Positions 39,571-64,000 of a DNA stretch of 64,000 nucleotides are shown piece by piece. Under the pieces are notes generated by a model. It worked only from the letters and a program-made list of their open reading frames with translations, searched no databases and was not told the DNA's origin. A program made the position numbers and the translations under genes. This stretch comes from Phallusia mammillata (lineage: Eukaryota): assembly GCA_965637545.1 (NCBI GenBank), contig OZ281496.1:24924001-24988000 (forward strand), in the 5' to 3' direction. Each line of letters opens with the position of its first letter. The stretch's first letter is position 1.

Positions 39571-39631
39571 AAATGTCGTTTATTAGTTTTTGCTTGTACA
39601 CAGACTTATGCAAAAAAAGGACTTTTAATTT

Positions 39632-43821: not shown

Positions 43822-46800
43822 CTATGCTTTCGCTCCTGGCCTCTCTTCTGAAACATGTTCTCTCGACTCCTCCACCACTCCTTGCTCACTTTCCTCCTCT
43901 TTCTCTTTTCCTTTCTTCATTTCATCTTTTTTCTTGCAGCAAACAAAGGCGATCAGCATGGCTCGAATCACGGCTGGGAAGAAGCAGTACACCAGAAACA
44001 TGACGACACCCTGAAACGAGAAAAACATTTTGCTGTTTCGTCAGTGGCACTGCCAAGACTTTTGGTTAGTTTTAGAGTTTTAATGTGGTCTGCACAATTT
44101 CATTTCAAAGCATAACTTTTTTCCAGCGGGCATGGGCACACTACGTACAATATATATATATTTATTTATATTACTTGACGTTTATGTGATCCCTATTCCT
44201 GCAACGTTTATTGTCTTTGTGCCGTACTTTTTGATTAAGCCCCATACACTTTAGGCTTAGGGGTAGTTTTGTCAAGAAAAAATACCCGCAACAGTTGCTT
44301 TCTAAATTTTGTAAGTGCTTGTGCAACCGCTCCAAACGCATTAATTTTACAGTTATAGTCACACAGAGTTTTAAACGGGACACAGATGTATGCGAGTGTT
44401 AAGTCAGTCCTGAATTAAACACGCTTTATTCAAACTACAGCTCCGTCTCGTCTTACAACTCTATGCAACTCTAACCAATCTTACCATGATGCCGTTCAGC
44501 AGGCCAAACATCCACGCACAACCGTCTAATTGTGATTGATTGGTTGCGTGCAACATCACAAATCCAAAGACCCATGCTATCGCGAAGCCGAAAAGCAAGA
44601 GAACAGAGAAAACAAAATCCAGCTTTGCATGTCCGTGCGGGTGTTTTTGAGGTTGCTCCGGTTTCTAGGTGGAAAATAAATCAGTTCTGTTAGTTTGCTA
44701 TTTGGTTCTTACAGCAGATTGTAGATATGCCTGTTATGGTTACGACTGCCTTTATGCATGACATTACTTAAACAAAGAGGGAATTGAACTAAGAATTTCA
44801 TGTTAATGGACGCAATACTTGCCACAAAGTGTTTTGTTGTAGCGCATAAACAATAACCTGCAATTACTCATAACGATTGCATTGCGCACCCATATAGAAA
44901 ACCGGGTGATCGATACAAAATAATTTAAACCATATTGATTCTATTCAAAAGTTTACGACTTTGGCTGAATGCATCTTACAAATAGCTTTTTTCCTTACCG
45001 GTCTTTTGCAGCACAGAAGCCTGGCCAACACCAGTGCTACAAGGATAATCACCAAGACAAGCGACAACATCACCGGTAAAATGAAACCCACTGAGAATGA
45101 GGAGCCATGAATCCAGCACATGTGTCTTGCCACGTATGTTGACACAAAGAAGATATCGTCTGACAACAAAAAGTCACGAAACTTGTAAGTATCTCATTCC
45201 CCAAAACGCCATTAAATTTGGGAAAATAGTTTTAGCCAAGGGTAAAATATAGAAACGAAAGAGAAACACATTACGGAACGGGTTTCAAACAAAGTGGTTG
45301 ATTATACATGCTGCAACTTATTTGGGGGTCATGTCGCTTAAAATGGCATTTTCAAAGCTTTTACTTCAGGGGTTCTTAACCAGGGGCATAAGACCTGCGA
45401 CTTTGAGATGCAAGGATACCGACTTAGTGAGGTGCAGTAGTAATAATTACTTCACGGAAAAACAGTAGTTGCAAGAACTACTTGATTAATTCGAATAGGT
45501 TCCAGCAAGAAATAAATGTTAAGAACTGCTGGCATCATCGCATAGCCCGCTTTACCTGGTCTGTAAAATCCGTTGTCGAAACTAATAGCAACGAAGGCAG
45601 TGATCAGTACGATGAAGAAAGGTACTATGTAGCAAAGAGCCGCGATCAGAGCCGGTGATTTTGCACCCTCAATCTAAAAAAGATAGAGTTGTAGTGAAGG
45701 CTTAGTGATAAAAAGAGGGCAGAGAAACTGGTTGACGCTGAAAATAAATTCACTTTAGTATTTAAATTCTGATACAATTGTTATTGCTAACTCATATACA
45801 AAGTGCGAAACAGAACAAGGTCATCGTTAAGTTCTAAAACATCAAAATATTAAGAACTTCTAAAAAATCCCCTAACGGCCATAATAGAGGCGGCAACGAA
45901 GCTTGAAAGCAACCCAAACCCTAATATGTTACTATTTAACAAACTCTCAATAATGCGCTTTTTGGTAGTAAACAAAAAAAAACGATTAGCCAGTCTTTAC
46001 ACGGAAAGGAGAGACAAAGTTACCCAAAAAATATAAATTTTCAAGCATAAAATGACGCATAACCGGTCAAAACATTTTCGTAAGCGACTTACATTTAGCA
46101 TAGCCTCGCTTGCATGGTAGATATTTGCAACAAGCCAGAACCAGGCGACCAGAAAGAAGTACTGCATGAATATACCAGAGGCATAACAGGTAGTTCGAAT
46201 AAAAACCTCACTGGTTCCTGTATAGATCTCGTCGATTCCCGCAATAAAGGCCACGTTGCAGATGAACAAAATCACGCAGATGTTACAAACGTACACGGCG
46301 CTTGGGTGCTCGCGAAGTTTTCTGCAAGTAGAATGCAAGTTTGAAAAATCGTATTGCACTAACATTGTGGCTAACACAGTAAACCTCGGTTAAACCGGAT
46401 TCGGTTAATCCGACAAAACTTGACGTATAAATGATTCGCAATGTGGCGAGGCTTCAACTGATCGACATCGGTTAATCCAGATCTTCACCTAATCGGGACT
46501 AATTTTTTGGTCCAAACGGGTCCTGGTTAACCGAGGTTTTTACTGTACATACGTTTTTGATCGGGCTTTTGCTAAACACACGTTAATGTAAGAAATGCGG
46601 GCAAAGGTATTCAAGTAAAGCGACAACCTTTTAATTGATTTTTAACAACATACACATTCGTAAGTCAAATCAACTCATTGGTACTGGATGGTTATGTAAG
46701 TTTTGCTGATTTCGTATTCAACTTACGTGATAAGCAAGAAACACAGGAAGGTTATCGCCAGAGCTATGATACAGATAATGAAGCCGAAGTAGGATGGACC

Positions 46801-46836: not shown

Positions 46837-49800
46837 CTGTAACAAAACACTGATTGAATTGGCAGAACCAGTGTTTTTTTAAGGTGTTTTTCAAGTTTCT
46901 CCAGCGGTTTCCCAAAATTTGGACATGGCTATTTTTGGTATTTAAATGAAACACTTGCGGTCTCTTAAAACTACTTAGCGGTCACCCAAACCAAACCTTA
47001 AAAAAACCCTGGGCAGAACTGTTGTGTTTTCGGTGGGATTTTATTTGACATATATGTCTGATTTAGTTTTAGACTACAATCCGAAATGTGCAGGCTGGCT
47101 AGTGTTGCAAACCGGCCTAAAATTGGTCTAAGCGCGGAAGTAAAAGGCAAAACGGATTGTTGTTGTTTTTTCAAAAAAACAAAAAAACAGCCCGAGTTAG
47201 GCTCGCAAGTTAGGTTACCAAACGGAAAATTAAGAGGCAAATGTGAACTAAATCAAGCCATATTCGTTTAAACCGAACGAGACACAAATAGCCCGGCTCA
47301 ACTTAAAACTCTAGTGCAGGCGTGTTTCTAATGTAAAAATTTGGTACACCGTTTATCAGAATTTAATAAATTTTAACATACAGCCTTTCTGTTTTAAAAT
47401 TTTACACACCGAAAGAGCACAAATCAAAATACCAAATTTTGACATTTTATTACTTACAACAACTAGTGAGTAGTCAGTGACTTGTTTGCAGATGCACATC
47501 TGTGGAAAGCTGTTGAGAACATAGGAGCAATCTTGAGCCGTCCATTGGCCCAGTGCCGTTTTATAGGACTTGCACTGAGTTCTTGTCACGTATTCCTAAA
47601 CCAAGTTGGCTGTTGTCATTATATTTGATTCTCGTTCAATAAATGGCTTCACAAAGCGGTGACTTTGAAATGATAATGCTATGCGCAATTGGAGCAAATG
47701 CTCTTGTAAGTACGGTTTTACAGATAAAAAATATTTGCAGCAAAATGGTAATGCAAAATGCCGTCTGTGGACAATGTAAGCAAAACAATCAACCATAAAC
47801 AAAAAATGTCATTGAGGTCTGAAATTTATGCTTTTCTAATTCTACCAGCGTTTTACAAAGGCAATTTTCTGACATTTTTACAGCCTGGTCAGACTATTTT
47901 ACCTTGAGAGTTGTGTTGGGAAAAAGAACAGCAGATTGTTTCTCCCGATTTGTGAGATAAATAATGGTGACGGGAATGTTCGAAGTGGTCTTGTTTCCGG
48001 TTGTAACACTGGTCGATACAATCTGTTAAAACAAAAATTTTGGTAATTAGATATCATCGACAGGAGTTGATGTAGGAGTTTACTTTTTACGAGTTCATGG
48101 TATCCATAATAATTAAAATGTGGAAAGATGCTTTAGAACACTATATACGTTTCGGCAAATGCTTACGCCATCATCAGGGATATGAAAGATGCTTTTTGAT
48201 AAACAAGACTTTAAGAAATCAAGGGCAAATCAGTAATTTGCAATGTCATATCGTTTTAAACACTACTGTCATATCGTTTTAAACACACTACAGATGTTTA
48301 ATGTATTGAAAACACACTACAGATGTCAACTGTTTTGTTAAGTAAGGGCGTCAAAAGATTACTTTTCTTTGGAAACTTTTTATGCGCACTTGACTATTTT
48401 AAACGTAATGTAAAAATATTGTGTAAAAAAAAATATATACAAGCTCGACACCCTGTCCGAAGTTCAGTTTAGACACATATGTTTCCCAACAAACACCACT
48501 GTTATGCTAGGTATAGGCACAGCGCAAAGCCAAACATCATAACTTCTGAATCCTCATGTGATATGAGCAGCAGCACTTACAAACTGTGACGTGCCAGCTG
48601 GAGGAAAAAGGCCCGGGTCCAGCAAAATCCAAAAGCTCATCCGAACTGTGCCGGTTGTTGATAGAGCTCGCTTTACTCTCGCTTTTGCAGCCTGATCAAT
48701 TTCCTTTCCAGCTATACGCACAATGACCACCTGTTTGGGGAAAGTATATATTATACAATTTGAAACCTTCATAAATTGAAAATCAACACCGTGTATTTGA
48801 TTTGTATGATAAAATAAATTTTAAACACAAACTGTGATGTTCTTATTTTAAACAGTGTACAAATAAATATAAATGTCAACATCAGAAAGTACATCAGTAC
48901 GCAGCAGATAGATAACACTGTTTTGACCTATAAGGTCTTATCTTTGCAGTGTATCTTACCATAAGTGATTGAGCGTATGCGTTAATATTCCACCTTATGG
49001 TAGTGCAGTGTATATATTCTGACATCCCTATAAATTGTGCTTAGGAATTGTTATTTGGGGATTACCTGTTGACCGGTTTGGGGGTTAACCAATGTACTGT
49101 TAACGTCTTTGTATTTGTTGTTTGCATCCAATTGTACATCGGTCACCTATAAAGTTGGTTGTCGTTAGGAGGAAAAAGTTTCAAAACAGAACTGTAATAA
49201 AGGTCTAATAGAGCGTATTTAGTATCAATCTGTCATAAAATTGATGTTTTCATTGGAAAATTATACAGTATCATTTACAGACATTGCAAAATTTAATGAA
49301 AAATGGTTAAAATTACAAAAAGCAATGGACATCAAAACAAAAATAAACGTTCACCTGCACACTCGTCTTATTGGTCTTGAGACTGATAAAGTTTTGGTTG
49401 GCTGGCATCACAACGCGATCAGTTAATTTGCGTAGACCAGTTTTCAGTTTTTGTTTGCTAGTTTTCGCGCTGGGAAAAAAACAAAATGTATTTAAACCAT
49501 GGCACAACACACCAACAACAGTACTCTGAGCCAGCATCTAAAACACTCCATGGTCTGCAAACGTATTCGCATTAATACAGCAATTCAATTAACGCTATCA
49601 ACTTAGTGCAACAGCAAAAATGCACTTACGTTGTTGTGTTTCCTAAAGCTGTTGATATTTTATCTGAGCTTACAATGGCATCAAAAAGAGTGGATGGTGC
49701 GATCTGTCAACAAATAAAAAAACATTAGCTAACGGAAAACCCCATTTCCAATAAGCAAAAAACGTAAAATATTTTCGAGTAACAAAATCAGTCAGTTAAT

Positions 49801-52800
49801 ATCATGGGATATACTTTTCGCCTAACTAGCATATTCAGACTAATTTCGTTACTTGAAAAATACAATCCGTTCTTGCTTACAGTGGTCGTAGATGACCATG
49901 CTGTTTGTTGGAGGGTCTGAAAAAAGTAATATAACATGACAAAACCCACCTGGACTGTCGTTGGATTCGTGTTAATAAGTGCTTCAAGATAGGCGGTAGC
50001 GTTTTCCGCCAATGTTTGGTTGACCGGTGTTGACAGCAGTAATTTAAGTTCGGCCATCTGCGCTTGAACTTCTTGTGTGGTGGCATTAGTCGCAGGTACC
50101 TGCAAATGTATTTGGCCAACAACTTAAAGAACTAAGGTTGGCAATACGAAAATATGGATTGAGCTGCAGCCATCAAGTACAGAAGTTCTCAGGAACGGTT
50201 AAATGGTATCTTGTTTGGAGTTAACATAACGCAACTAAAGGATTAGATACTTGATACGGTGCTTGTGTTAGCTATGCAGATCATAGTAAAGTAGGGTAAA
50301 CAATTATAGCGTATCGCATACCTTGTTAAACAGTTGATTTAAAGAGGCATTGCAAACAACGACAGTTGTTGATTGGAATTTGGCAACACTGCTTGTTTGA
50401 CGAACGCATTGACTTGTTGCTATCGGTCGACCTGGTAAACAACAAAAACGTAAGGTATTGACCAGTTTTATATTGGAATACTATTGGTAATGGTGCATTA
50501 AATATCTGTGTCGTAAAATTTACCCCAAAAGCCCAGCAGTGAACGGCAATAGACAACGAAAGACAGATTTACCATCGATGTCACACAATGGCTATTAACA
50601 ACACTAAAATTTGTTTCAAAGTGACAGGAAAAAAAACGTTTAGACAAACAAGCTCCGACAAGGAATAACTGAACTAGTTTTGAATATTGAATTTGCGTAT
50701 GCATAATAACTTAATAAATGTTTTTAAGCAGACTATAATACTTCCTATCAAATTACAACATTTTTTGACAATATTTCGTTTTAGCTGAAAAATGTAGACA
50801 CACAAATGTTTTAAAGCAGACTATAATATTAACCATCAAATCAAAACAGTTTTTGATAATATTTCGCTTGTTTAAAAAGCTGAATATTTTAGTTCATTCA
50901 CTATACAATCCCGAATGATATATTTGAGATAAAAGAAGGAAACTAACCATCTTTGCAAGTTTCAGCTGATGTGGCGGATATCCCAACTTCGGTTTGAGCA
51001 AAATTGTATGTCGTTCCACCAACCAGAATAGCGGTCTTCGGGCAGTATATGGTTTCTGTACAAAGTAAGTTCTTCATATCCTGATTGAGCATTTGTTAAA
51101 CTGTTTCCAATAAACTTACTTATTACTGCAGAAGCGGTGACTGTTATGGCTGGTGTAGGTTTCAAGGAGCTTGTCGTTGCTAAACAATCACAATGGTATT
51201 TAAAAAAAACAAGAAATTTGAAATTTTGAAATATTTCGGAGCGTTATTGATTTTAAATGTTATTTTAAATGAATCAAGTAATTTAGGGAAAATTCAATTA
51301 GACATTTAGCGTAATTTGAAAGGTAACCAGGCTTTAAAAATGCAAAGCAATTTATATTGAGTCGTTATTTGACATATATTTCTAACACTAATAAAGATGC
51401 GCTGCATATATTTTTGTTTATCAGATACCACATTCAAATTCCATTCAAATTCCGTCGGATAAGTGGAATTGATAAGGAAGTACAAAATGACCTTGGAAAT
51501 GTTTCTAACGTGTTAGGAATAAGGAACATGATTCCTACTATATTTATGTAAAGTAAAACTATTTTTTATTGTAAATGTCTAACTGCAAAATCGTAATGTC
51601 GAATTCCAACGTATTCGTGCAAAAGCAGGCTGAAACTAAATTTGTCGATAGACGTAGATTTTACATACCCGATGTCAACGTAACCGGGGCAACCGTCGTC
51701 ACTAAGGGAGTAGTGGTCTCTGCAAGATATAAAGGTATATTTTTTTACAAAATGTACAATGAATGTCACCCACTTTAGGTACAGACAAAGTTATGCAAGA
51801 ATGTGCTAAAAAACGCCTACTTTGGGCAAGTTTTTTTCCCTCTGGGAGTACAAAGAATGTCTCCAAACCGAAAGCAAGAACTTAAACTAATTATACAAAG
51901 AAGCTATAATATTTCCACAGAGCTTTTAGAACAATACAGGCAACGTCACATATACTATATATGTTATATCACGAAAGTTATATACAGTAAACCACGGTTA
52001 AAACGGATTTAGATAATGCGGATCTTCGCCTAATTCGGACAAAACTTGAGGTACACATGATTTGTAATGTGGTGAGGCCTTAACGAATCAAAATTAACCG
52101 AGGTTTACTTTTTAATCTTCGAATCTACAGACAAGATATAACATGTTCCCAAAATATGTTTACGTGAAAGATGACAGTACTTTCCATTATGATGAAAGTT
52201 GACAGCACCATACGATATATGGCGATTTTCGTATTTTCCAGCCTAGGTCGGACCCCCCTTAGTATTATAAATCTCTCAACATTTGGTTAACCGGATACAG
52301 GACCTTAATTTCTTATATTGAATAATGGCCCAAAATGGCACATTGGTCTGAAATTTGATACTTAATTACTTCCTTAATCACTCACGGTTTACTAATTTCC
52401 AATCGATAGTCAGTGTGGAATTGTGTCCTGCTTTTTTATCCGTCCTTTCGATTCTAACAGTGAAGCAACAATCCGTGATGTTTGTAACGTTAATTTTGAA
52501 CGTTGCCGGTTTGCCACCACTCAAAGTCGCTGTAACGGTTTGGTTTCTGAACTTGATTGCCGTGTTGAATGGAATTGTCAAGGTTTGAACAGGAGTTGTG
52601 CTTCCAGTAACGTTTGTCAAACCCTTTTGTAGCACTAAAAAATTAATGTATGTATCAGTATGAACAGACATTGAAACACGCAAAATGCATTGATAAATAC
52701 GGTAAATTTTAACTTTCAACCAAAATCTTCCAGCTGATTGCTAGGTGGATGAAGACTGCAATGAACCTTATGCTTATTGATTGATTCAAATTTATTAATT

Positions 52801-55800
52801 CATTAAGTCATCCATCCTTATGAATTGATATAAATATATTTCGTCTATGCGGCATCTGCAGTGTCTTATTCCACTAAAATGCATTGATAAAAGTCGAAAA
52901 ATGTTTTTTTTACCAGTCGGGCTTGTTGCTGTCAGTGCCACTGGTGCAGGCTCTATAAAACATAAAAAACAAATACCTTTTATGGCCAAAACAAAACAAC
53001 TTAAATTCAAAAGTAAAAAAACGCATCTGGTTTGGTAAGTGGTCGGCTAAACCAAGTATTAAATTTGCTGAACTTTTCCATCAATAAAACATACTATTTT
53101 CTTAACGCAGTGGTTCCCAACTGGGAAGGAATTCCTCTCAAGAGAGAAAAAGAAGAAGAATTTACTTTCATATGTAAATGTGGTTTGTAAATTGACACTC
53201 TAGTTTTGGAAGTAAAACCTGTAAAGTTAATAAAATACCCAATTTTAAATAAACTTTGTATGGTTAAGCATCTCCTATGTAGTCTATTGGGGAGAAATCA
53301 ATAAATGTTTCGAATTGTTAAGTGAGGAATTCGTCTATCAAGGTTCGGAACCACTGTCTTAACCGTTTTGAGATGCACGATAGCCATGTTTTTAATCGCA
53401 AGTAATATGCGATTAACCGGAACAGTCCTAGCAAACTGTTTAAAGCCTCAAATCGAGTGACGGTTTGTCATACCTTGAAGTTCAAACTGGACAATAAAAG
53501 AAGCGTTCCACCCAGAAACTTTGTCAATTCTGTTAACAATGCTATCGAACGAAGTTGGTAATATTTTGTCAACATTAACTTGGAAAATGTGACCAGGCGG
53601 CTGTTTCCACGATAGTTTAACTGTTGCCTTGTTGCTGTGCGGTATGAGGGGCACTGCGACCTTTTGACTGGACTTCTTGTTGTCTTTTACCACAAACCAT
53701 CCGACTTGTTTCACTGTAATACGAAGTTTTTAGTCAGCACCATGGAAATTTCGAATCAAATATCCGTCTACTGGTCTGTAGTTGCAGTCTGCAGAGTTGC
53801 AATAGTCATGATGCTTATTAAAGCGAAATGCATTTGTTTTTGTAAAACAATAAAAATACAGCGACTGATTCGGTGTTTTCATTTCAAAATTTCCGGCCTT
53901 CATGAATTAATGACCCTGAATCGTCGCAGTCCTTTGCTTTTACTTGGGAGATTTCATTAATAAGAAAAGATTTACTACAAATCAAACAGTAATTTTAAGA
54001 ATATAATGGACCATATCGCAAAAACGTCATGTTTTTTAATACATGCTTCGGCACAAAATAGAACGTCTGTCATAATTTTGTTCATAAAGATAGTTTTTAT
54101 TTCAGGTCAAAAGAGTTTGTTTGAACTGCATATTTTGAACTATGTCCGGTTCCAATGGAAACATCATATCCTTTGGAAATAACGCTTACCTGTCGGCCCT
54201 TGTGGTGTTGTAGGGGTGGCAGAAATGCTGTTCAACTTGGAATCTAAAGCACAAGGTACATGAGTTTCACTTAACACCATTAAGTGGTATGACAGTATTA
54301 AAGTAGCATTAAAATGGCATAACAGTAATTATTTAATAGTTTCTCTTAAACCTGTTAACTTTCGTCAAACAGATTCATGTCTGGGATCAGCTCTGTGCGT
54401 TCATGTAGACAAGCGACCAAGGCACATTTATACTAGCCCTATTTCCGTCGTTATATCTAAGCAAGTCAGCTTGCCAGGCATTTTCACACGGTAGGAAAAA
54501 AAGGTAGAAAAATCTCGGTGGGATTCGAACCCCAGATAGGAGTCTAACGCCTTAGAATCCGTGCTCTTTAACCGGGTATGCTGTATACACAAGTGTATAT
54601 CGCATCAAACCTGGGATGCACGAAGGGAATGACCTGCTTGTTGTGAATATTATTGCGTCAGTAATGCGAAAGATGAAGTAATAGGCAAGCTGGAGTGTTG
54701 TACTTTGTAGCTTAGTTTACATCTCAAGTCGCCTACCGTTTATGGCACGCCATTGGAGGATTGGCGAGTCGCTCCATCCAGCAACCTGGTCCGTCCGTAC
54801 CACAGTAACATTAAAGCCAGTATCGGTGATAGCAGTAATCAACATGTCAAAGGTCTTTAGTGGGGCACCAACTAACTGTAACTTGATGCTTGCACTTGAG
54901 TTAAGGCAGTGTGGAAATTTGATTGATAGTGATTTGACGTTGCTTGCGCTAGGCCCAACATTGAACAGACCTCTTTGAAGGACTGCAAACATAAAAGTTT
55001 ACATTGTTTTGTAACACTTACTTTACCAGTCCATGCATTTAACAGGGCTTATATTACTATCAGTATTGTATTCCCTTGACAAATATTGTACCTATAGGTT
55101 TCAGCTTTAGACTTTGAAACGGGAATGGATTATTTTTAGAGCGTGTGATTAAAGACGATTTCTACACAAGCTCAGGCGTAACTTTAAATTTATGTTAAGC
55201 CTCGAGCTATAACTAACACATTTTCATTGACAGTAATAAAAGGTCAGTTTTGCGCAATTGTTTCAATTGGCTGCAACTAGTCCTACGTTAAATTTTATAA
55301 CTAGTAAAGTAAAGACTAGTAAAGATGTTATAGAGTCCATTAAAAAAAAAAGATATCTAGTAAAGATGTTATAGAGTCAATTCTTTCTATTTATGTTAGC
55401 CATACCAAACACATTTTTATTTACCAGTAAGTGAATGCAGGGTTACAGGAAAGGTTTGTTTCCAAAATTGCTACTCACTGCTGAACTACGTTTTTAATAT
55501 GGAGTTGTCCCGACAGAAATTCTAGTAAATTGGCTAGTTTTTGCAACAAAGAAACAAAGCAATAATACCCACCATCAGGGACTTTGGCCGAAGGAACAAC
55601 TGTTGTGGTCTTGTTGTTTAATGCAGCAGGGCCTGCGTATGTGTTAGCGTTAGTAACAAAAGTAACAAAATTAAGCAAAAATTGCGTAGCACAGAAAGAA
55701 CTGTTCAACACATAACAAAATTGTGGGTATTTTACAGATTGTAGAATTGTTTTTTAGCAATTTTACTACTCGTATATTTAGGGTTATCATCAGTCTGAAG

Positions 55801-58800
55801 GGATTTTGGTTTAGATTCAGAGAAAAAAACGAATACCAATTAATCACCATGATAAGCTGTTCAGGCATTGTAAAAAGAAGACTGACTTAGCAACAAAACG
55901 TACCAGGAAAGACTTCTACATGTAACGGGAAGGATTTCTTCCAGCCGGAGTTGGAGTCGGTTCTTGTAACCCTCACCGAGAGTGACGAATCACAGATTTT
56001 GGTTACTTCAGGAACAAAGGTATGATATGGAAGACAGGCTACAGAAATTCTTATTTCCACATTCTTGTTAAATGTTTTGCTTAACGGCAAATTCATTGTC
56101 AAAGACGGGTTTGGACTACTTGGGACTTCCATCCATTCCTGTTGCAAAACTGTAAAGCGAAATGTTTAAAGTAAATATTTGGTTTGCTGTTAGTTTAAAA
56201 CGTCCTTTTACCAATTCTTCCACTGGTAGCATTTATTGGCGTCTCAACTCTTTTGGTTTCTGAAAAAAAAATCAGCCATAATAAGCAGTGATTGTTGTGT
56301 TAAACCAGTGGTTCCCAACCTGTGGTACGCGAAGGTTTTTCAGGTGGTACGCGAGTAGTTTCCGTTTTTTTTTTCACAAAAAGTAGATGCGGCCGGAAAT
56401 GACTTTCGACGCGCTGTTAGCAAATTTACACCGCGCATCGACCAATTGGTGGACGGTAAACAAAAACAAAAATCTCAGTAAATTTAGTTACGGTGCTTTA
56501 GTGTTATTTTAGTAGGCCAATATTATTCTTCTGAATAAAACGTGATGCGACCAAATTAGTTGTTCTGCAAGAAGTGGTACGTGTGGCAGTACAAAACATC
56601 TAAATGGTACGAGATCGTAAAAAGGTTGGGAACCCCTGTGTTAAACGAACTAGCCAATGACGCCATTTAGAAAGGGGGAATAGTTTAGACTGAATTTCCA
56701 CTACCAAAAAAATAGACATATATAAATATCACAGACATTAAATGGGGCTTATATTAGTATACTGTAATATTTCGAAACAGCTGTTTATGCAAACGCACAT
56801 TGATTCCCATAGACAAGAATTCCATAGACAAAAACGGTTGAATTTTCCTATCACTCAGTTGTAAAGTGCCTTTACAAAGCCGTGTTACAGCAGAGGTCAA
56901 ATAATATGTCAATACTGCGCTCTCCAGCCAACTTTGGACCAAACTGTAGCCAAGATTTTTCAAACAGGGCATTTTTAAACGAGTTGGTAACGCCTACAAC
57001 AATTAGCATTGCCAAAATGTTTTGTCAATCAATTAGGTAATGGCTTATTCATTGACAAAACCTGCAATTAAAAGACAAATGCCATTGTTACTATAATTAC
57101 CAGGCAAGACTTTGAATTGCAATGGGAATGATTGGTTCCATCCTGATGGCAAATCAGTTCGTTTCACTTCCACAGTGAAATTGGAGTCACAAATTTGGGT
57201 GACTTTCAAAGTAAAGGTATGTTTGGGTAAACCAGGTGCAGTCACCATCACTTCAACACTCTTGTTCAAAGTTTTCTTGAGAGGAAAGGTAAATGATGCA
57301 GTTGGAGTAGAACTGCTCGGAATGGTCATTGAACCAGTCTGCAAAGCTGAAAAACAACAGAGAAGTAAAGAGTCGATCATATTTTTCACACAAATCTAGT
57401 GGCAAAGGGACTTACTTTGGGGCACACTTGGTGTAGTGGTAGTGATATTTTTGTTGGCAAGAGATTTGGGTTCTGAAACAAAACACAAATTTGAAATTTG
57501 ATTTTTAATGTTTCCAATATTAACTGTGCATGAGAGCGGTACTCTATCTGGGAACACGACACACAGCAAAATATTTCAATTTTAAGAACTCAATCTCATT
57601 ACCTGGATGGATTTCATAGTGCAATGGAAATGAATTGTTCCACCCTGATGGCAAATCAGTTCGTTTCACTTCCACAGTGAAATTGGAGTCACAAATTTTA
57701 GTGACTTTCAAAGTAAAGGTATGCTTGGGTAGACCAGGCGCAGTAACCATCACTTCAACACTCTTGTTCAAAGTTTTATTGAAAGGAAAGGTAAATGAGG
57801 CAGTTGGAGTAGAACTGCTCGGAATGGCCATTGAACCAGTCTGCAGAGCTGAAAAACAATAAAAAAATAAAGAGTCAGTCAGATTTTTCACACAAATGTA
57901 ATGGATTAAAGGCCTTACTTTGGGGCACACTTGGTGTGGTGGTGGTGATATTTTTGTTGGCAAGCGCTTTGGGTTCTGAAACAAAACACAAACTTGAAAT
58001 CTAATTTCCAATGTTTGCAATATTAATCATAATCAAAAGCATTACACTATTTGCCATGCAATGCAAACAACAATCTTCGAAATTTAACATCACAAACTCA
58101 TTACCTGGAAAAACTTCATAGTGCAATGGAAATGATTGGTTCCACCCTGATGGCAAATCAGTCCGTTTCACTTGTACAGTAAAATTGGAGTCACAAATTT
58201 TGGTGACTTTCAAAGTAAAGGTATGCTTGGGTAATCCAGGTGCAGTCACCATCACTTCAACACTCTTGTTCAAAATTGTCTTGAGCGGAAAGGTAAATGA
58301 TGCAGTTGGAGCAGAACTGCTCGGAATGGTCATTGAACCACTCTGCAAAGCTGAAAAACAACAAAGAAATGAAGAGTCAGCTATTTTTTGCACCAATCTA
58401 CTGGATAAAGGCCTTACTTTGGGATACACTTGGTGTAGTGGTAGCAACATTTTTGTTGGCAAGGGCTTTGGGTTCTGAAACAAAACACAAACTTGATAAT
58501 TGATTTTGAATGTTTACAATATAAATTGTGCATAAACAACGTAACACTATTTGGCAAGCAACACAAGAAACAATCATCGAATTTCAACATCACAAACTCA
58601 TTACCTGGAAAAACTTCATAGTGCAATGGAAATGATTGGTTCCACCCTGATGGCAAATCAGTTCGTATCACTTGCACAGTGAAATTGGAGTCACAAACTT
58701 TTATGACTTTCAAATTAAAGGTATGCTTGGGTAGACCAGGTGCTGTCACCATCACTTTAACGCTCTTGTCCAAAGTTGTATTGAAAGGAAAGGTAAATGA

Positions 58801-61800
58801 GGCAGTTGGAGTAGAACTGCTTGGAATGGTCATTGAACCAGTCTGCAAAGCTGAAAAACAAAAAATAAATAAAGAGTCAGTCAGATTTTTCGCACCAATC
58901 TACTGGACAAAGGGTCTTACTTTGGGGCACACTTGGTGTGGTGGTGGTAGTGATATTTTTGTTGACAAGCGCTTTGGGTTCTGAAACAAAACATAAACTT
59001 GAAATGTAATTTCCATTGTTCGCAATATTAATCATAATCAAAAGCATTACACTATTTGGCATGCAATGCAAACAACAATCTTCGAAATTCAACATCACAA
59101 ACTCATTACCTGGAAAAACTTCATAGTGCAATGGAAATGATTGGTTCCACCCTGATGGCAAATCAGTTCGTTTCACTTGCACAGTGAAATTGGAGTCACA
59201 AACTTCTATGACTTTCAAATTAAAGGTATGCTTTGGTAGACCAGGTGCAGTCACCATCACTTCAACGCTCTTGTCCAAAGTTGTATTGAAAGGAAAGGTA
59301 AATGAGGCAGTTGGAGTAGAACTGCTCGGAATGGTCATTGAACCAGTCTGCAAAGCTGAAAAACACAAAGAAATGAAGAGTCAGTCAGATTTTTCGCACC
59401 AATCTACTGGACAAAGGGCCTTACTTTGGGGCACACTTGGTGTGGTGGTGGTAGTGATATTTTTGTTGACAAGGGCTTTGGGTTCTGAAACAAAAGACAA
59501 ACTTCATGTTTGATGTTTCATGTTTGCAATAATAACTGTGCATAAAGAGCGTTACTCTTTTAGGAACACAACACAAGGAAAAATATTTAAATTTTAAGAA
59601 CACGATCTCATTACCTGGATAGATTTCATAGTGCAATGGAAATGATTGGTTCCACCCTGATGGCAAATCAGTTCGTTTCACTTGCACAGTGAAATTGGAG
59701 TCACAAACTTCTATGACTTTCAAATTAAAGGTATGCTTTGGTAGACCAGGTGCAGTCACCATCACTTCAACGCTCTTGTCCAAAGTTGTATTGAAAGGAA
59801 AGGTAAATGAGGCAGTTGGAGTAGAACTGCTCGGAATGGTCATTGAACCAGTCTGCAAAGCTGAAAAACACAAAGAAATGAAGAGTCAGTCAGATTTTTC
59901 GCACCAATCTACTGGACAAAGGGCCTTACTTTGGGGCACACTTGGTGTGGTGGTGGTAGTGATATTTTTGTTGACAAGGGCTTTGGGTTCTGAAACAAAA
60001 GACAAACTTCATGTTTGATGTTTCATGTTTGCAATAATAACTGTGCATAAAGAGCGTTACTCTTTTAGGAACACAACACAAGGAAAAATATTTAAATTTT
60101 AAGAACACGATCTCATTACCTGGATAGATTTCATAGTGCAATGGAAATGATTGGTTCCACCCTGATGGCGAATCAGTTCGTTTCACTTGCACAGTGAAAT
60201 TGGAGTCACAAACTTTTATGACTTTCAAATTAAAGGTATGCTTTGGTAGACCAGGTGCTGTCACCATCACTTTAACGCTCTTGTCCAAAGTTGTATTGAA
60301 AGGAAAGGTAAATGAGGCAGTTGGAGTAGAACTGCTTGGAATGGTCATTGAACCAGTCTGCAAAGCTGAAAAACAAAAAATAAATAAAGAGTCAGTCAGA
60401 TTTTTCGCACCAATCTACTGGACAAAGGGTCTTACTTTGGGGCACACTTGGTGTGGTGGTAGTGATATTTTTGGTGGCAAGCGCTTTGGGTTCTGAAACA
60501 AAACAGAAACTTGAAATGTAATTTCCATTGTTCGCAATATTAATCATAATCAAAAGCATTACACTATTTGGCATGCAATGCAAACAACAATCTTTGAAAT
60601 TCAACATCACAAACTCATTACCTGGAAAAACTTCATAGTGCAATGGAAATGATTGGTTCCACCCTGATGGCAAATCAGTTCGTTTCACTTGCACAGTGAA
60701 ATTGGAGTCACAAACTTCTATGACTTTCAAATTAAAGGTATGCTTTGGTAGACCAGGTGCAGTCACCATCACTTCAACGCTCTTGTCCAAAGTTGTATTG
60801 AAAGGAAAGGTAAATGAGGCAGTTGGAGTAGAACTGCTCGGAATGGTCATTGAACCAGTCTGCAAAGCTGAAAAACACAAAGAAATGAAGAGTCAGTCAG
60901 ATTTTTCGCACCAATCTACTGGACAAAGGGCCTTACTTTGGGGCACACTTGGTGTGGTGGTGGTAGTGATATTTTTGTTGACAAGGGCTTTGGGTTCTGA
61001 AACAAAAGACAAACTTCATGTTTGATGTTTCATGTTTGCAATAATAACTGTGCATAAAGAGCGTTACTCTTTTAGGAACACAACACAAGGAAAAATATTT
61101 AAATTTTAAGAACACGATCTCATTACCTGGATAGATTTCATAGTGCAATGGAAATGATTGGTTCCACCCTGATGGCGAATCAGTTCGTTTCACTTGCACA
61201 GTGAAATTGGAGTCACAAACTTTTATGACTTTCAAATTAAAGGTATGCTTGGGTAGACCAGGTGCTGTCACCATCACTTTAACGCTCTTGTCCAAAGTTG
61301 TATTAAAAGGAAAGGTAAATGAGGCAGTTGAAGTAGAACTGCTCGGAATGGTCATTGAACCAGTCTGCAAAGCTGAAAAACAACAAAGAAATGAAGAGTC
61401 AGTCAGATTTTTCGCACCAATCTACTGGACAAAGGGCCTTACTGTGGGGCACACTTGGTGTGGTGGTGGTGGTAGTGATATTTTTGTTGGCAACGGCTTT
61501 GGGTTCTGAAACAAAACACAAACTTCATGTTTGATGTTTCATGTTTGCAATAATAACTGTGCATAAAGAGTGTTACTCTTTTAGGAACACAACACAAGAA
61601 AAAATATTTAAATTTTAAGAACACAATCTCATTACCTGGAAAAACTTCATAGTGTAATGGAAATGATTGGTTCCACCCTGATGGCAAATCAGTTCGTTTC
61701 ACTTGCACAGTAAAATTGGAGTCACAAATTTTAGAAACTTTTAAAGTAAAGGTATGCCTGGGTAATCCAGGTGCTGTCACCATCACTTCAACACTCTTGT

Positions 61801-64000
61801 TCAAAATTGTCTTGAGCGGAAAGGTAAATGAGGCAGTTGGAGTAGAACTGCTCGGAATGGTCATTGAACCACTCTGCAAAGCTGAAAAACAACAAAGAAA
61901 TGAAGAGTCAGTCAGATTTTTTACACAAATCAACTCGACAGGGGGCCTCACTTTGGGGCACACTTGGTGTGGTGGTGGTGGTGATATTTTTGTTAGCAAG
62001 CGCTTTGGGTTCTGAAACAAAACACAAACTTGAAATCTAATTTCCAATGTTTGCAATATTAATCATAATCAAAAGCATTACACTATTTGCCATGCAATGC
62101 AAACAACAATCTTCGAAATTTAACATCACAAACTCATTACCTGGAAAAACTTCATAGTGCAATGGAAATGATTGGTTCCACCCTGATGGCAAATCAGTTC
62201 GTATCACTTGCACAGTGAAATTGGAGTCACAAACTTTGGTGACTTTCAAAGTAAAGGTATGTTTGGGTAAACCAGGTGCAGTCACCATCACTTCAACACT
62301 CTTGTTCAAAGTTTTCTTGAGAGGAAAGGTAAATGATGCAGTTGGAGTAGAACTGCTCGGAATGGTCATTGAACCAGTCTGCAAAGCTGAAAAACAACAG
62401 AGAAGTAAAGAGTCGATCATATTTTTCACACAAATCTAGTGGCAAAGGGACTTACTTTGGGGCACACTTGGTGTAGTGGTAGTGATATTTTTGTTGGCAA
62501 GAGATTTGGGTTCTGAAACAAAACACAAATTTGAAATTTGATTTTTAATGTTTCCAATATTAACTGTGCATGAGAGCGGTACTCTATCTGGGAACACGAC
62601 ACACAGCAAAATATTTCAATTTTAAGAACTCAATCTCATTACCTGGATGGATTTCATAGTGCAATGGAAATGAATTGTTCCACCCTGATGGCAAATCAGT
62701 TCGTTTCACTTCCACAGTGAAATTGGAGTCACAAATTTTAGTGACTTTCAAAGTAAAGGTATGCTTGGGTAGACCAGGCGCAGTAACCATCACTTCAACA
62801 CTCTTGTTCAAAGTTTTATTGAAAGGAAAGGTAAATGAGGCAGTTGGAGTAGAACTGCTCGGAATGGTCATTGAACCATTCTGCAAAGCTGAAAAACACA
62901 AAGAAATGAAGAGTCAGTCAGATTTTTCGCATCAATCTACTGGACAAAGGGCCTTACTTTGGGGCACACTTGGTGTGGTGGTGGTAGTGATATTTTTGTT
63001 GACAAGGGCTTTGGGTTCTGAAACAAAAGACAAACTTCATGTTTGATGTTTCATGTTTGCAATAATAACTGTGCATAAAGAGCGTTACTCTTTTAGGAAC
63101 ACAACACAAGGAAAAATATTTAAATTTTAAGAACACGATCTCATTACCTGGATAGACTTCATAGTGCAATGGAAATGATTGGTTCCACCCTGATGGCAAA
63201 TCAGTTCGTTTCACTTGCACAGTGAAATTGGAGTCACAAACTTTGGTGACTTTCAAATTAAAGGTATGCTTGGGTAGACCAGGTGCTGTCACCATCACTT
63301 TAACGCTCTTGTCCAAAGTTGTATTGAAAGGAAAGGTAAATGAGGCAGTTGGAGTAGAACTGCTCGGAATGGTCATTGAACCAGTCTGCAAAGCTGAAAA
63401 ACAAAAAACAGATAAAGAGTCAGTCAGATTTTTCGCACCAATCTACTGGACAAAGGGTCTTACTTTGGGGCACACTTGGTGTGGTGGTAGTGATATTTTT
63501 GGTGGCAAGCGCTTTGGGTTCTGAAACAAAACATAAACTTGAAATGTAATTTCCATTGTTCGCAATATTAATCATAATCAAAAGCATTACACTATTTGGC
63601 ATGCAATGCAAACAACAATCTTTGAAATTCAACATCACAAACTCATTACCTGGAAAAACTTCATAGTGCAATGGAAATGATTGGTTCCACCCTGATGGCA
63701 AATCAGTTCGTTTCACTTGCACAGTGAAATTGGAGTCACAAACTTCTATGACTTTCAAATTAAAGGTATGCTTTGGTAGACCAGGTGCAGTCACCATCAC
63801 TTCAACGCTCTTGTCCAAAGTTGTATTGAAAGGAAAGGTAAATGAGGCAGTTGGAGTAGAACTGCTCGGAATGGTCATTGAACCAGTCTGCAAAGCTGAA
63901 AAACACAAAGAAATGAAGAGTCAGTCAGATTTTTCGCACCAATCTACTGGACAAAGGGCCTTACTTTGGGGCACACTTGGTGTGGTGGTGGTAGTGATAT
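43822..64000 (-). CDS. Gene C: adhesion GPCR with at least 18 H-type-lectin-like modules, mucin, HRM/GAIN and 7TM; its 5' end lies beyond the window
   Basis: Last exon GVVMFLVYCFFPAVIRAML...ERPGAKA* (stop at 43822). 7TM, GPS, GAIN and HRM-like (IYCPKTAILVGGTTYNFAQTEVGISATSAETC) exons follow in order. Upstream modules are phase-1 exons that splice in frame. Confidence 0.8.
46377..46545. mobile_element. Tc1/pogo (Tigger-like) MITE
   Basis: TIRs cagtaaacctcggttaa / ttaaccgaggtttttactg, followed by TA. Confidence 0.7.
47458..47595 (-). CDS. Gene C GPS exon
   Basis: 138-nt exon: EYVTRTQCKSYKTALGQWTAQDCSYVLNSFPQMCICKQVTDYSLVV. Confidence 0.88.
51985..52110. mobile_element. Second copy of the same Tc1/pogo-like MITE family
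   Basis: ta|cagtaaaccacggttaa ... ttaaccgaggtttact; internal similarity to 46377-46545. Confidence 0.65.
52386..52634 (-). CDS. Gene C diverged H-type-lectin-like module
   Basis: 249-nt exon: ...LTIPFNTAIKFRNQTVTATL...FKINVTNITDCCFTVRIERTDKKAGHNSTLTIDWKLV. Confidence 0.72.
53108..53356. mobile_element. hAT-type MITE
   Basis: TIRs cagtggttcc / ggaaccactg; flanks tcttaacg / tcttaacc (7 of 8 match). Confidence 0.8.
53474..53713 (-). CDS. Gene C diverged H-type-lectin-like module
   Basis: 240-nt exon: ...FQVNVDKILPTSFDSIVNRIDKVSGWNASFIVQFELQG. Confidence 0.68.
54512..54592 (-). pseudogene. tRNA-derived SINE head or tRNA pseudogene in an intron
   Basis: Minus strand ends ...ctgggttcgaatcccaccg (perfect B-box/T-arm). 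No convincing full cloverleaf. Confidence 0.5.
54737..54982 (-). CDS. Gene C diverged H-type-lectin-like module
   Basis: 246-nt exon: ...SIKFPHCLNSSASIKLQL...FDMLITAITDTGFNVTVVRTDQVAGWSDSPILQWRAING. Confidence 0.75.
55904..56149 (-). CDS. Gene C array-proximal diverged copy of the array module
   Basis: 246-nt exon: ...LSKTFNKNVEIRISV...TKICDSSLSVRVTRTDSNSGWKKSFPLHVEVFP. Confidence 0.78.
56306..56638. mobile_element. hAT (Charlie-like) MITE
   Basis: TIRs cagtggttcccaacct / aggttgggaacccctg; perfect 8-bp TSD tgttaaac. Confidence 0.9.
57101..64000 (-). repeat. Coding tandem array: 14 complete ~504-bp units (246-nt domain exon, about 57-63 nt linker exon, two introns), continuing off the right edge
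   Basis: First domain exon 57101-57346, last 63650-63895. Each encodes LQTGSMTIPSSSTPTASFTFPF...VCDSNFTVQVKRTDLPSGWNQSFPLHYEVFP; linker (E)PKxLxNKNITTTTPSVPQ. All exons checked are phase 1. Confidence 0.93.

What the first reader, a model, noticed from the sequence alone, without database searches (positions are those of the whole stretch)
57101..64000. Young, mosaic exon-intron array: likely copy-number-variable receptor ectodomain
Introns are almost as identical as exons across 14 units. Units 1-2 resemble units 11-12 (5040 bp apart) and 7-8 resemble 13-14, but with swapped sub-segments (e.g. KVTQIC..VEVKRT versus KVTKVC..VQVIRT; NQSF versus NNSF; FNTTLD versus LKKTLN versus LKTILN). This pattern points to gene conversion and unequal crossover. 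No stop or frameshift was seen in any domain exon, and linker ACC runs vary only in whole codons, implying selection on the reading frame. Symmetric exons also allow combinatorial skipping. The array would generate allelic and isoform diversity in valency and reach, as in polymorphic immune or allorecognition receptors (inference).
Basis: partly seen in the sequence, partly recalled or inferred. Interest (0 to 1): 0.75.

Follow-up and report, generated by a model that had tools for sequence, protein, structure and literature searches.

The report
Lectin-domain exon array of sea-squirt receptor
A sea squirt (Phallusia mammillata) adhesion-type G-protein-coupled receptor gene carries a recently expanded row of at least 14 near-identical two-exon modules, each encoding a divergent H-type lectin domain plus a threonine-rich linker; this receptor build turned up in no paper I searched, but it arises by an ordinary repeat-expansion process.

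Summary
Window 57101-64000, on the minus strand, has 14 units of 500-509 bp. Each unit is a 246-bp domain exon, a ~70-bp intron, a 57/60/63-bp Thr-rich linker exon and a ~128-bp intron. All exons are phase 1-1, all splice sites are intact, and no domain exon has a stop or frameshift. The array runs off the window end.

Mosaicism is real: exact blocks of up to 630 bp recur out of register, Sawyer's test gives P<=0.001 and Rm>=18. One correction: introns are less alike (79-90%) than exons (93.5-94%), and pN/pS is 0.39.

New findings:
- The 82-residue domain is a divergent H-type lectin domain (AF2 pLDDT 93; HPA Z 9.2; hhalign 99%, E 2e-18). Pfam misses it.
- RNA contigs splice the last array exon into four older copies of the domain, a GPS motif and a 7TM region. 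This part equals the public fragment 'CD97 antigen-like' of Phallusia mammillata, so the array is an adhesion-GPCR ectodomain.
- All four RNA runs also contain array-less transcripts that start at a non-coding exon.
- Part of the array has a three-unit higher-order repeat.

Not tested: copy-number variation, exon skipping, sugar binding. An immune or allorecognition role remains speculation. Earlier scan notes on neighbouring DNA mention the same 'giant gene'.

The parts
57101..64000 (-). Tandem array of 14 two-exon modules (U1 at low coordinates to U14). It is the 3'-most part of an array that continues past the window end.
   Evidence: Unit lengths are 500-509 bp.
57101..57346 (-). U1 domain exon (246 bp), the last H-type lectin-like domain of the array
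   Evidence: Open frame. The RNA joint 56259->57101 in runs X7 and X8 links it to the receptor body.
57416..57472 (-). U1 linker exon (57 nt, Thr-rich, carries an N-I-T sequon)
   Evidence: The joint 57472->57603 in X8 confirms intron A.
57603..57848 (-). U2 domain exon
57919..57975 (-). U2 linker exon (57 nt)
58105..58350 (-). U3 domain exon
58418..58474 (-). U3 linker exon (57 nt)
58605..58850 (-). U4 domain exon
58921..58980 (-). U4 linker exon (60 nt)
59110..59355 (-). U5 domain exon; this is the domain that was modelled
   Evidence: pLDDT 92.9, H-type lectin fold.
59425..59484 (-). U5 linker exon (60 nt)
59615..59860 (-). U6 domain exon
59930..59989 (-). U6 linker exon (60 nt)
60120..60365 (-). 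U7 domain exon
60436..60492 (-). U7 linker exon (57 nt)
60622..60867 (-). U8 domain exon (unit identical to U5)
60937..60996 (-). U8 linker exon (60 nt)
61127..61372 (-). U9 domain exon
61443..61505 (-). U9 linker exon (63 nt, six Thr codons)
61636..61881 (-). U10 domain exon
61952..62011 (-). U10 linker exon (60 nt)
62141..62386 (-). U11 domain exon
   Evidence: It shares the 630-bp exact block with U1-U2.
62456..62512 (-). U11 linker exon (57 nt)
62643..62888 (-). U12 domain exon
62958..63017 (-). U12 linker exon (60 nt)
63148..63393 (-). U13 domain exon
63464..63520 (-). U13 linker exon (57 nt)
63650..63895 (-). U14 domain exon (identical to U5 and U8 over the part inside the window)
56799..56938 (-). 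Alternative non-coding exon, apparently a first exon, that gives array-less transcripts
   Evidence: The joint 56259->56799 is present in all four RNA runs. The receptor's reading frame has three stops inside this exon and its junction codon with the next exon is TAA; the one open frame runs into a stop early in the next exon.
56212..56259 (-). 48-nt linker exon between the array and the older domain copies
   Evidence: Joints 56149->56212, 56259->57101 and 56259->56799; frame checked.
55904..56149 (-). Older domain copy d1 (47% identical to the array domain)
   Evidence: P0002 starts at its internal Met.
55573..55632 (-). Linker exon after d1
54737..54982 (-). Older domain copy d2
54190..54243 (-). 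Linker exon after d2
53474..53713 (-). Older domain copy d3
52914..52952 (-). Linker exon after d3
52386..52634 (-). Older domain copy d4
47458..47595 (-). Exon with the GPS motif. It has Q-V-T where cleaving receptors have H-L-T/S.
   Evidence: Pfam GPS E 0.006, the P0002 sequence, and an ADGRG2 alignment that spans GPS plus 7TM.
43825..46389 (-). 7TM and C-terminal exons of the adhesion GPCR. The stop codon follows 43825.
   Evidence: Pfam 7tm_2 at 24.6 bits against a cut-off of 20.6. ADGRG2, E1, G6, D1 and E5 hits at E 8e-12 to 1e-6. tblastn of P0002.

Best explanation
The region is the membrane-proximal end of a tandem exon array in the ectodomain of a fast-evolving adhesion GPCR of the ascidian Phallusia mammillata; I found no close relative in other species.

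Shown:
- Each ~503-bp unit encodes an 82-residue divergent H-type lectin domain, a six-stranded beta-sandwich, on one phase 1-1 exon.
- A second phase 1-1 exon encodes a 19-21-residue Thr-rich linker that carries an N-glycosylation sequon.
- The units are spliced head to tail. The last unit is spliced through a 48-nt linker exon into four older, diverged copies of the same domain, then a stalk, a GPS motif and a 7TM region.

Inferred from the pattern of identity:
- The array grew recently by unequal crossing-over in registers of one unit and of three units (about 1512 bp).
- Gene conversion then patch-homogenised it in tracts of 0.3-0.6 kb that ignore exon and unit borders, so introns travel with exons.
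- Purifying selection keeps the frame, the fold and an invariant R-T-D...G-W-N motif.

Inferred function:
- The protein is a long, heavily N- and O-glycosylated beads-on-a-string stalk that displays many lectin-like modules.
- It may bind a repetitive glycan surface (microbe, tunic, matrix or another cell) multivalently, or simply set the reach of the receptor, and pass binding or pulling to the 7TM.
- The GPS has Q-V-T in place of H-L-T/S, so the receptor is probably not autoproteolytically cleaved and would signal as one chain.
- Array-less transcripts also exist, starting at what looks like an internal alternative first exon (only contig ends mark its start). Their open frame lacks a signal peptide, so what they produce is unclear.

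The confidence of 0.75 applies to the anatomy, the domain and gene identity, and the mode of evolution. The ligand-binding part alone I put at about 0.4.
For: - Anatomy and intact splice sites.
- Splicing: the public transcript-derived P. mammillata fragments P0001 and P0003 read linker-domain-linker and domain-linker-domain. RNA contigs show GT..AG joints for every intron laid, including 56259->57101 (array to receptor body) in X7 and X8.
- Receptor identity: P0002, 'CD97 antigen-like' CAB3229160.1, maps at ~100% to exons between 56132 and 43825. The 7tm_2 hit is above Pfam's cut-off. The closest solved chains are ADGRG2, E1, G6, D1 and E5.
- Fold: AF2 mean pLDDT 92.9 with six strands. The top eight structural matches are the three solved H-type lectins listed (HPA, discoidin I, SLL-2) and C-terminal domains of phage tailspikes or pyocin tail fibres: LKA1 gp49 Z 10.4, HPA 2ccv Z 9.2 (79 of 81 residues, 2.2 A), discoidin I Z 9.1, SLL-2 Z 7.4.
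- Homology: a profile of this gene's domains against 14 Pfam-H_lectin-positive domains gives hhalign probability 99.0%, E 2.4e-18, over all 82 columns. The window profile retrieves H_lectin proteins, including ascidian ones from Clavelina and Ciona.
- Turnover: exact out-of-register blocks; SSCF P<=0.001 and Rm>=18; a three-unit periodicity, with intron-A types 1-4-4 repeating and 94-99% identity at offsets 3, 6 and 9 against 89-92% at other offsets.
- Constraint: pN/pS 0.39; no indels in domain exons against five in the introns.
- Beads on a string: a three-domain AF2 model has well-folded domains, disordered linkers and pTM 0.42.
Against: - Pfam itself does not call H_lectin on the array domain (no hit at E<=10). 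Only a paralogous exon of the neighbouring gene reaches E 0.08.
- The residues that contact GalNAc in Helix pomatia agglutinin are not kept, so sugar binding is unproven. The domain could be a purely structural spacer.
- Characterised H-type lectins act as trimers, with sites between protomers. No such packing was predicted here.
- The gene's 5' end, its signal peptide and the total unit number lie outside the window.
- Runs X11 and X12 show the receptor body but no array contigs, so the array-bearing form is not the universal product.
- The GPS hit is below Pfam's cut-off (17.5 against 22.5 bits).
- The exact copy number depends on an assembly that I could not check with spanning reads.
Confidence: 0.75

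Rival explanations
1. One reading: a polymorphic, copy-number-variable immune or allorecognition receptor. Unit number and unit mosaics would differ between individuals, and exon skipping would add isoforms, under diversifying or balancing selection.
For: - The architecture is that of human DMBT1, a domain exon plus linker exon array with proven CNV that binds bacteria (PMC4851238, PMC9038570).
- The array shows recent unequal exchange and conversion.
- Domains in the public transcript fragments P0001 and P0003 match no window unit better than 96% and 93%, so further unit variants or alleles exist.
- Amino-acid variation clusters in a few places (residues 22-27, 45-51, 76-80) and toggles N-glycosylation sequons.
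- Lectin domains suit non-self recognition.
Against: - No individual-level data were examined.
- pN/pS is 0.39 overall, which points to constraint rather than diversification.
- The extra variants could simply be units beyond the window end.
- No exon-skipping joint was seen (one unit only).
- None of the known ascidian allorecognition genes that I recall is an adhesion GPCR (own knowledge).
Confidence: 0.2
2. The array is a passive glycosylated spacer. The H-type lectin fold has lost ligand binding and serves only as a rigid bead in a mucin-like stalk that sets the height of the receptor above the membrane. Copy number would drift nearly neutrally.
For: - The HPA sugar-contact residues are not conserved.
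- The domain carries three or four N-glycosylation sequons, and the linkers are Thr-rich.
- The predicted arrangement is beads on a string.
- Array-less transcripts exist.
Against: - The R-T-D...G-W-N motif, which sits at the alignment positions of HPA's W83, H84 and Y89, is invariant in all 14 units. Its core (R, D, G) is invariant in the four old copies too and common in the bacterial and ascidian relatives.
- That is more conservation than a spacer needs, although it could be structural.
Confidence: 0.25
3. Assembly artefact: the number and order of units, or part of the mosaic pattern, come from mis-joining of near-identical repeats or of two haplotypes.
For: - Exact repeats of up to 630 bp are present and three units are identical. 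Such arrays are error-prone, and ascidian genomes are highly heterozygous (own knowledge).
- Spanning reads were not examined.
Against: - At least 11 of the 14 units are distinct in sequence, differing by up to 18%.
- Every unit keeps exact exon lengths, an open frame and intact splice sites.
- Several different unit variants are present in independent transcript data.
- A multi-unit array must therefore exist, even if its exact count is uncertain.
Confidence: 0.1

Closest known systems
H-type lectins (Pfam PF09458): Helix pomatia agglutinin, the discoidin I/II C-terminal domain, coral SLL-2, and the related C-terminal domains of phage tailspikes and pyocin fibres
   Same: The same six-stranded beta-sandwich (Z 7.4-10.4 over 78-81 of 81 residues). 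Profile-profile homology to PF09458 members is clear (99%, E 2e-18). The shared sequence pattern is Q-x-G ... F-P ... T-F ... F-x-V-x-V-x-R-x-D ... G-W.
   Different: Below Pfam's own threshold. The HPA GalNAc-contact residues are replaced. The last conserved Trp is Tyr or Phe in the array copies. There is one apparently unpaired Cys per domain. The domains are strung 14 or more times in one chain with mucin-like linkers and tied to a 7TM receptor, whereas the characterised lectins are small soluble homotrimers or hexamers.
Adhesion GPCRs (class B2), e.g. ADGRG2 (closest solved 7TM), ADGRE5/CD97 with its alternatively spliced EGF array, and latrophilins with an RBL lectin domain
   Same: A large modular ectodomain, a GPS motif just before TM1, and a secretin/adhesion-type 7TM. 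The domains are encoded by symmetric exons. An alternative promoter gives N-terminally different transcripts, as catalogued for mammalian aGPCRs (PMC6667449).
   Different: The ectodomain type (H-type lectin) is absent from the domain list of the 2026 consortium review (PMC13197933). The GPS lacks the His-Leu|Thr cleavage triad. The 7TM is very divergent: the best non-self word-search hit is 23% identical. The array is far younger and more repetitive than EGF or cadherin arrays.
Human DMBT1 (gp340, salivary agglutinin): SRCR/SID exon array
   Same: A regular array of about 13 domain units interspersed with short linker (SID) units. Repeats are near-identical, and copy number changes by unequal exchange (PMC4851238). 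The product is a multivalent glycoprotein.
   Different: DMBT1 is secreted, uses SRCR domains, and its CNV and bacterial binding are demonstrated. Here the domains are H-type lectin-like, the protein is a 7TM receptor, and neither CNV nor ligand binding has been shown.
'Unclassified Adhesion' GPCRs of Ciona (Kamesh et al. 2008, PMC2396169)
   Same: Ascidian-specific adhesion GPCRs without vertebrate orthologues. In 21 of the 24, no N-terminal domain other than GPS was recognised. That is what a Pfam-only scan would report for this gene too.
   Different: No direct orthology was established here, and the Ciona models may be truncated. This locus shows that at least in Phallusia such receptors can carry Pfam-invisible lectin-type domains.

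Membership tests
H-type lectin domain (PF09458) | Six-stranded antiparallel beta-sandwich as in HPA and discoidin | tested here: met
   AF2 pLDDT 92.9 with six strands. 2ccv Z 9.2, rmsd 2.2 A, 79 of 81 residues; 2w94 Z 9.1; 3wmp Z 7.4.
H-type lectin domain (PF09458) | Sequence homology to family members | tested here: met
   hhalign of A2 against A3 (all 14 members Pfam H_lectin positive) gives probability 99.0%, E 2.4e-18, over 82 columns.
H-type lectin domain (PF09458) | Reaches Pfam's gathering score on its own | tested here: not met
   No H_lectin hit at E<=10 for three array domains or the four old copies. A domain of the neighbouring gene reaches E 0.082.
H-type lectin domain (PF09458) | HPA-type GalNAc-contact residues (N61, R63, W83, H84, Y89) | tested here: not met
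   Chaining the alignments, these positions hold H-T, R-T-D and W in the array domain. The site position is conserved, its chemistry is not. The HPA alignment itself is weak (E 0.85).
H-type lectin domain (PF09458) | Trimeric assembly with sugar sites between protomers | tested here: inconclusive
   A three-domain AF2 model gives pTM 0.42 and no confident packing, but its alignment is shallow. Inter-chain assembly cannot be tested here.
H-type lectin domain (PF09458) | Carbohydrate binding | not testable with these tools
   Needs a glycan array or binding assay.
Adhesion GPCR (class B2) | Secretin/adhesion-type 7TM domain | tested here: met
   7tm_2 at 24.6 bits against a cut-off of 20.6 on exon 46000-46389. 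ADGRG2 E 8.4e-12 and other aGPCR chains. A crude hydropathy window count on P0002 gives seven hydrophobic segments.
Adhesion GPCR (class B2) | GPS motif directly N-terminal of TM1 | tested here: inconclusive
   Pfam GPS E 0.006, 17.5 bits, below the 22.5 cut-off. The Cys pattern and the C-x-C motif are present. The ADGRG2 alignment starts upstream of the 7TM. The GAIN fold was not modelled.
Adhesion GPCR (class B2) | Autoproteolysis triad H-L|T/S | tested here: not met
   The sequence reads Q-V-T at that place. Uncleaved aGPCRs are known, so this does not exclude membership.
Adhesion GPCR (class B2) | Large adhesive ectodomain on the same transcript | tested here: met
   Joint 56259->57101 in X7 and X8, in frame.
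Adhesion GPCR (class B2) | N-terminal signal peptide | not testable with these tools
   The 5' end of the gene lies beyond the window end.
DMBT1-like copy-number-variable exon array (works like) | Repeating domain exon plus linker exon, all of one phase | tested here: met
   246-bp and 57/60/63-bp exons, phase 1-1.
DMBT1-like copy-number-variable exon array (works like) | Unit number differs between individuals | not tested

The most novel reading that the evidence does not exclude
The three-unit higher-order repeat may reflect function. Successive H-type lectin domains, or domains of neighbouring chains linked through the one unpaired Cys per domain, would assemble into the trimeric sugar-binding units typical of this lectin family. 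The receptor would then be a copy-number-polymorphic, multivalent glycan sensor for microbes or for self/non-self contact, a DMBT1-like pattern-recognition array wired directly to a G-protein-coupled receptor.
Probability: 0.1. Interest if true: 0.8.

Novelty: new variant of a known kind. Interest (0 to 1): 0.5.

Why it matters
- It gives adhesion GPCRs an ectodomain type, the H-type lectin, that is absent from the domain list of the 2026 consortium review and that I found in no paper on these receptors.
- It suggests that the ascidian 'GPS-only' orphan adhesion GPCRs may carry domains that Pfam cannot see.
- It offers a compact, transcribed example of a DMBT1- or LPA-like exon array attached to a signalling receptor, in which repeat number could tune valency or reach.
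- It is a tractable case for asking how ectodomain length and multivalency feed into adhesion-GPCR activation, and whether such arrays vary in natural ascidian populations.

Tried and rejected
- TRF found nothing, because the period exceeds its 500-bp limit. Units were defined by motif anchors instead.
- Pfam on the array domain and on the older copies gave only chance-level hits: NPCBM_assoc, Gp53-like_C, T26-6p.
- A PDB sequence search with the domain profile gave nothing significant; the best hit was CBM21 glucoamylase at E 0.075.
- The word-index protein search found only the species' own fragments and, for the 7TM, a nematode latrophilin at 23% identity.
- The look-up of encoding contigs had no record of P0002 or P0003, so no second assembly of the locus could be compared.
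- The idea that three consecutive domains fold into an intramolecular pseudo-trimer got no support: pTM 0.42. It is not refuted either.
- The bacterial promoter scan of the alternative-exon region is irrelevant to a eukaryote.
- A search for other 7TM proteins among the 150 best domain hits found none.
Exons were searched one by one by reference, and the public transcript-derived proteins P0001-P0003 served wherever a joined sequence was needed.
Full report
**What is there.**
On the minus strand of 57101-64000 lie 14 head-to-tail units of 500-509 bp. TRF missed them because the period exceeds its 500-bp limit.

Read 5' to 3' on the minus strand, a unit consists of:
- intron A, about 128 nt;
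- a linker exon of 57, 60 or 63 nt;
- intron B, about 70 nt;
- a domain exon of exactly 246 nt.

All 27 exons have canonical AG/GT borders. Every intron is phase 1, so each exon can be added or removed without changing the frame. The linker encodes a short Pro/Lys stretch, an N-I-T sequon and four to six Thr. It differs in length only by whole ACC codons. The array runs off the window end, so 14 is a minimum.

**How alike the units are.**
Mean pairwise identity by part:

| Part | Identity |
|---|---|
| Domain exon | 93.5% |
| Linker exon | 94.2% |
| Intron B | 90.0% |
| Intron A | 78.6% |

Intron A falls into four types. So introns are homogenised along with the exons, but they are not 'almost as identical'. 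Synonymous divergence in the domain exon (pS 0.125) is of the same order as intron divergence. Replacement divergence is lower (pN 0.048, ratio 0.39). Introns carry five small indels in 200 bp, the domain exons none in 246 bp, and the linkers only 3- or 6-nt length differences. The frame and the protein are therefore under purifying selection.

**Mosaic structure.**
Exact blocks recur at multiples of the unit length but out of register with unit and exon borders:

| Length | First copy | Second copy | Offset |
|---|---|---|---|
| 630 bp | 57198-57827 | 62238-62867 | 5040 |
| 619 bp | 59625-60243 | 60632-61250 | 1007 |
| 581 bp | 59084-59664 | 60596-61176 | 1512 |
| 545 bp | 59120-59664 | 59625-60169 | 505 |
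| 466 bp | 60507-60972 | 63535-64000 | 3028 |

On 153 polymorphic sites of the 13 complete units:
- Sawyer's sum of squared fragment lengths exceeds all 1000 permutations.
- 1222 of 3916 informative site pairs fail the four-gamete test.
- The Hudson-Kaplan minimum is 18 exchanges.

I also found a three-unit higher-order repeat. Intron-A types along U1-U13 read 3 1 2 1 4 4 1 4 4 1 3 4 1. Within U4-U14, identity at offsets of 3, 6 and 9 units is 94, 95 and 99%, against 89-92% at other offsets. The simplest history is unequal crossing-over in one-unit and three-unit registers, followed by short conversion tracts.

**What the domain is.**
Pfam gives nothing for the array domain.

*Older copies in the window.* An HMM of the domain finds four older copies just downstream on the same strand, at 55904-56149, 54737-54982, 53474-53713 and 52386-52634. 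They are 23-47% identical to the array domain. It also finds more distant copies in a neighbouring gene at 21.9-28.4 kb.

*Fold.* With these as an alignment, AlphaFold2 gives a six-stranded sandwich at mean pLDDT 92.9. An exhaustive structural search puts H-type lectins and the structurally similar C-terminal domains of phage tailspikes and pyocin tail fibres in the first eight places:

| Match | Z | Note |
|---|---|---|
| LKA1 gp49 C-terminal domain | 10.4 | |
| Helix pomatia agglutinin (2ccv) | 9.2 | 79 of 81 residues, 2.2 A |
| phi297 gp61 | 9.2 | |
| Discoidin I H-type domain | 9.1 | |
| R1 pyocin fibre | 8.7 | |
| SLL-2 | 7.4 | |

*Sequence homology.* A profile search of 1.84 billion representatives returns 243 proteins at E<=0.001. 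The better hits carry Pfam H_lectin. They include several proteins of the ascidian Clavelina lepadiformis, one of Ciona and one of amphioxus. A profile made only from this gene's domains aligns to 14 bona fide H_lectin domains with probability 99.0% and E 2.4e-18 over all 82 columns. The domain is therefore a divergent H-type lectin domain.

*Binding site.* I chained the weak but full-length HPA alignment to the profile-profile alignment. HPA's sugar-contact residues N61/R63, W83/H84 and Y89 then fall on H-T, R-T-D and the W of G-W. Those residues are invariant in all 14 units. The core (R, D, G) is also invariant in the four old copies. So the site position is conserved but its chemistry differs, and specificity cannot be inferred.

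*Variable residues.* Variable positions cluster at residues 22-27, 45-51 and 76-80, and several of them create or destroy N-glycosylation sequons. Each array domain has a single Cys. Related domains of the neighbouring gene have a second Cys that the array domain lacks.

**What gene it belongs to.**
*Public fragments.* The best database hit, P0002 (1086 aa, CAB3229160.1, 'CD97 antigen-like', Phallusia mammillata), maps at ~100% to exons between 56132 and 43825. This identifies the species. It also shows that downstream of the array lie four old domain copies with their own Thr/Pro linkers, a stalk, a GPS motif and seven transmembrane helices. Evidence for the receptor part:
- Pfam 7tm_2 is above its cut-off on one exon, and GPS is just below its cut-off.
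- The closest solved chains are ADGRG2 (E 8e-12), ADGRE1, G6, D1 and E5.

P0001 and P0003, filed as 'LOC100182044', are transcript-derived fragments of the array itself. They confirm both splice junctions of the unit.

*RNA contigs.* I laid RNA contigs of four public runs on 52300-57700.
- Every intron is removed at GT..AG on the minus strand.
- In runs X7 and X8, the last array exon (57101) is joined to a 48-nt linker exon (56212-56259) and from there to the old copies, in frame. So the array is part of the adhesion-GPCR transcript.
- All four runs also contain a joint from a 140-nt exon at 56799-56938 to the same linker exon. In the receptor's frame that exon carries three stops and forms a TAA at the junction; the one frame that stays open runs into a stop early in the next exon.
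- X11 and X12 show no contigs on the array.

There is thus an array-less transcript, apparently from an internal promoter. P0002 is its conceptual product, and it starts inside the first old domain without a signal peptide.

*GPS motif.* The GPS reads Q-V-T where cleaving receptors have H-L-T/S. By established knowledge of GAIN autoproteolysis, this predicts an uncleaved receptor.

**How it probably works.**
A three-domain model gives well-folded domains, disordered linkers and pTM 0.42, that is, beads on a string. My best reading is a long, heavily glycosylated stalk that displays many lectin-type modules, so that the receptor can engage a repetitive glycan surface multivalently, or simply reach further. 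Module number would be set by unequal exchange. The binding step is inference. A spacer-only role is a serious rival.

**Comparison and novelty.**
- The gene-structure analogue is human DMBT1, with SRCR and SID exons and proven CNV (PMC4851238).
- The receptor class is the adhesion GPCR.
- The 2026 consortium review lists RBL as the only lectin-type ectodomain and does not mention tunicates (PMC13197933).
- Papers holding both 'H-type lectin' and 'adhesion GPCR' concern Toxoplasma proteins only.
- The Ciona GPCR survey found only a GPS in 21 of 24 unclassified adhesion receptors (PMC2396169).
- None of the 150 best domain hits has a related 7TM, and the 7TM has no close relative in the word search.

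I rate it a new variant of a known kind.

**Limits.**
- Copy-number variation, exon skipping, ligand binding, the gene's 5' end and the total unit number were not tested.
- Earlier scan notes place parts of a 'giant gene', including its intron 1, 27-38 kb beyond the window end. I could not read that DNA.

Noticed in passing
window 9300-29750, minus strand: A second adhesion-GPCR gene lies downstream on the same strand. It has C-type lectin exons (29042-29296, 19748-20395, 14542-14937; Pfam Lectin_C E 3e-9 to 6e-11). It has seven distant copies of the same H-type lectin-like domain (21898-28386; one reaches Pfam H_lectin E 0.08). It also has a long Thr/Glu-rich mucin-like exon (20739-21827) and 7TM exons at about 9350-11000.
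   Followed up: partly
window 2160-7310, minus strand: A third adhesion-GPCR paralogue, with a C-type-lectin-like exon (6599-6949), a Thr-rich exon (5943-6368), a GPS-like exon (3916-4122, reading A-V-L-A at the cleavage place) and 7TM exons (2165-3549). The window therefore holds a tandem cluster of three lectin-bearing adhesion GPCRs.
   Followed up: no
window 56799-56938, minus strand: A non-coding alternative exon spliced to 56259 in all four RNA runs. Contigs end at 56937/56938 in two runs and no AG acceptor is present there, so it looks like an internal transcription start that gives array-less transcripts whose open frame lacks a signal peptide.
   Followed up: partly
window 56300-56650: A short element with inverted ends (GGTTCCCAACC ... 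GGTTGGGAACC, with internal GGTACGCG motifs) sits in the intron between the array and the receptor body. RNA contigs from elsewhere pile up on it and run on into unrelated sequence, as expected for a dispersed MITE-like repeat.
   Followed up: no
window 54737-54982: One X8 contig joins 54243 to 55573 with 246 other letters in place of this 246-bp domain exon. This may be a very divergent allele of the exon or a contig from a paralogue.
   Followed up: no
window 37500-39600, minus-strand frames: Open-frame segments of about 66-67 codons recur, most often at about 160-bp spacing, with near-identical translations. This suggests a satellite-like tandem repeat between the first and second receptor genes.
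   Followed up: no
window 57101-63895, each domain exon: Each array domain has exactly one Cys, in the turn before the fifth strand. Related domains in the neighbouring gene pair it with a second Cys that is missing here, so 14 or more apparently unpaired extracellular thiols are predicted. Variable residues also switch N-glycosylation sequons (N-T-T, N-K-T, N-K-S) on and off.
   Followed up: partly
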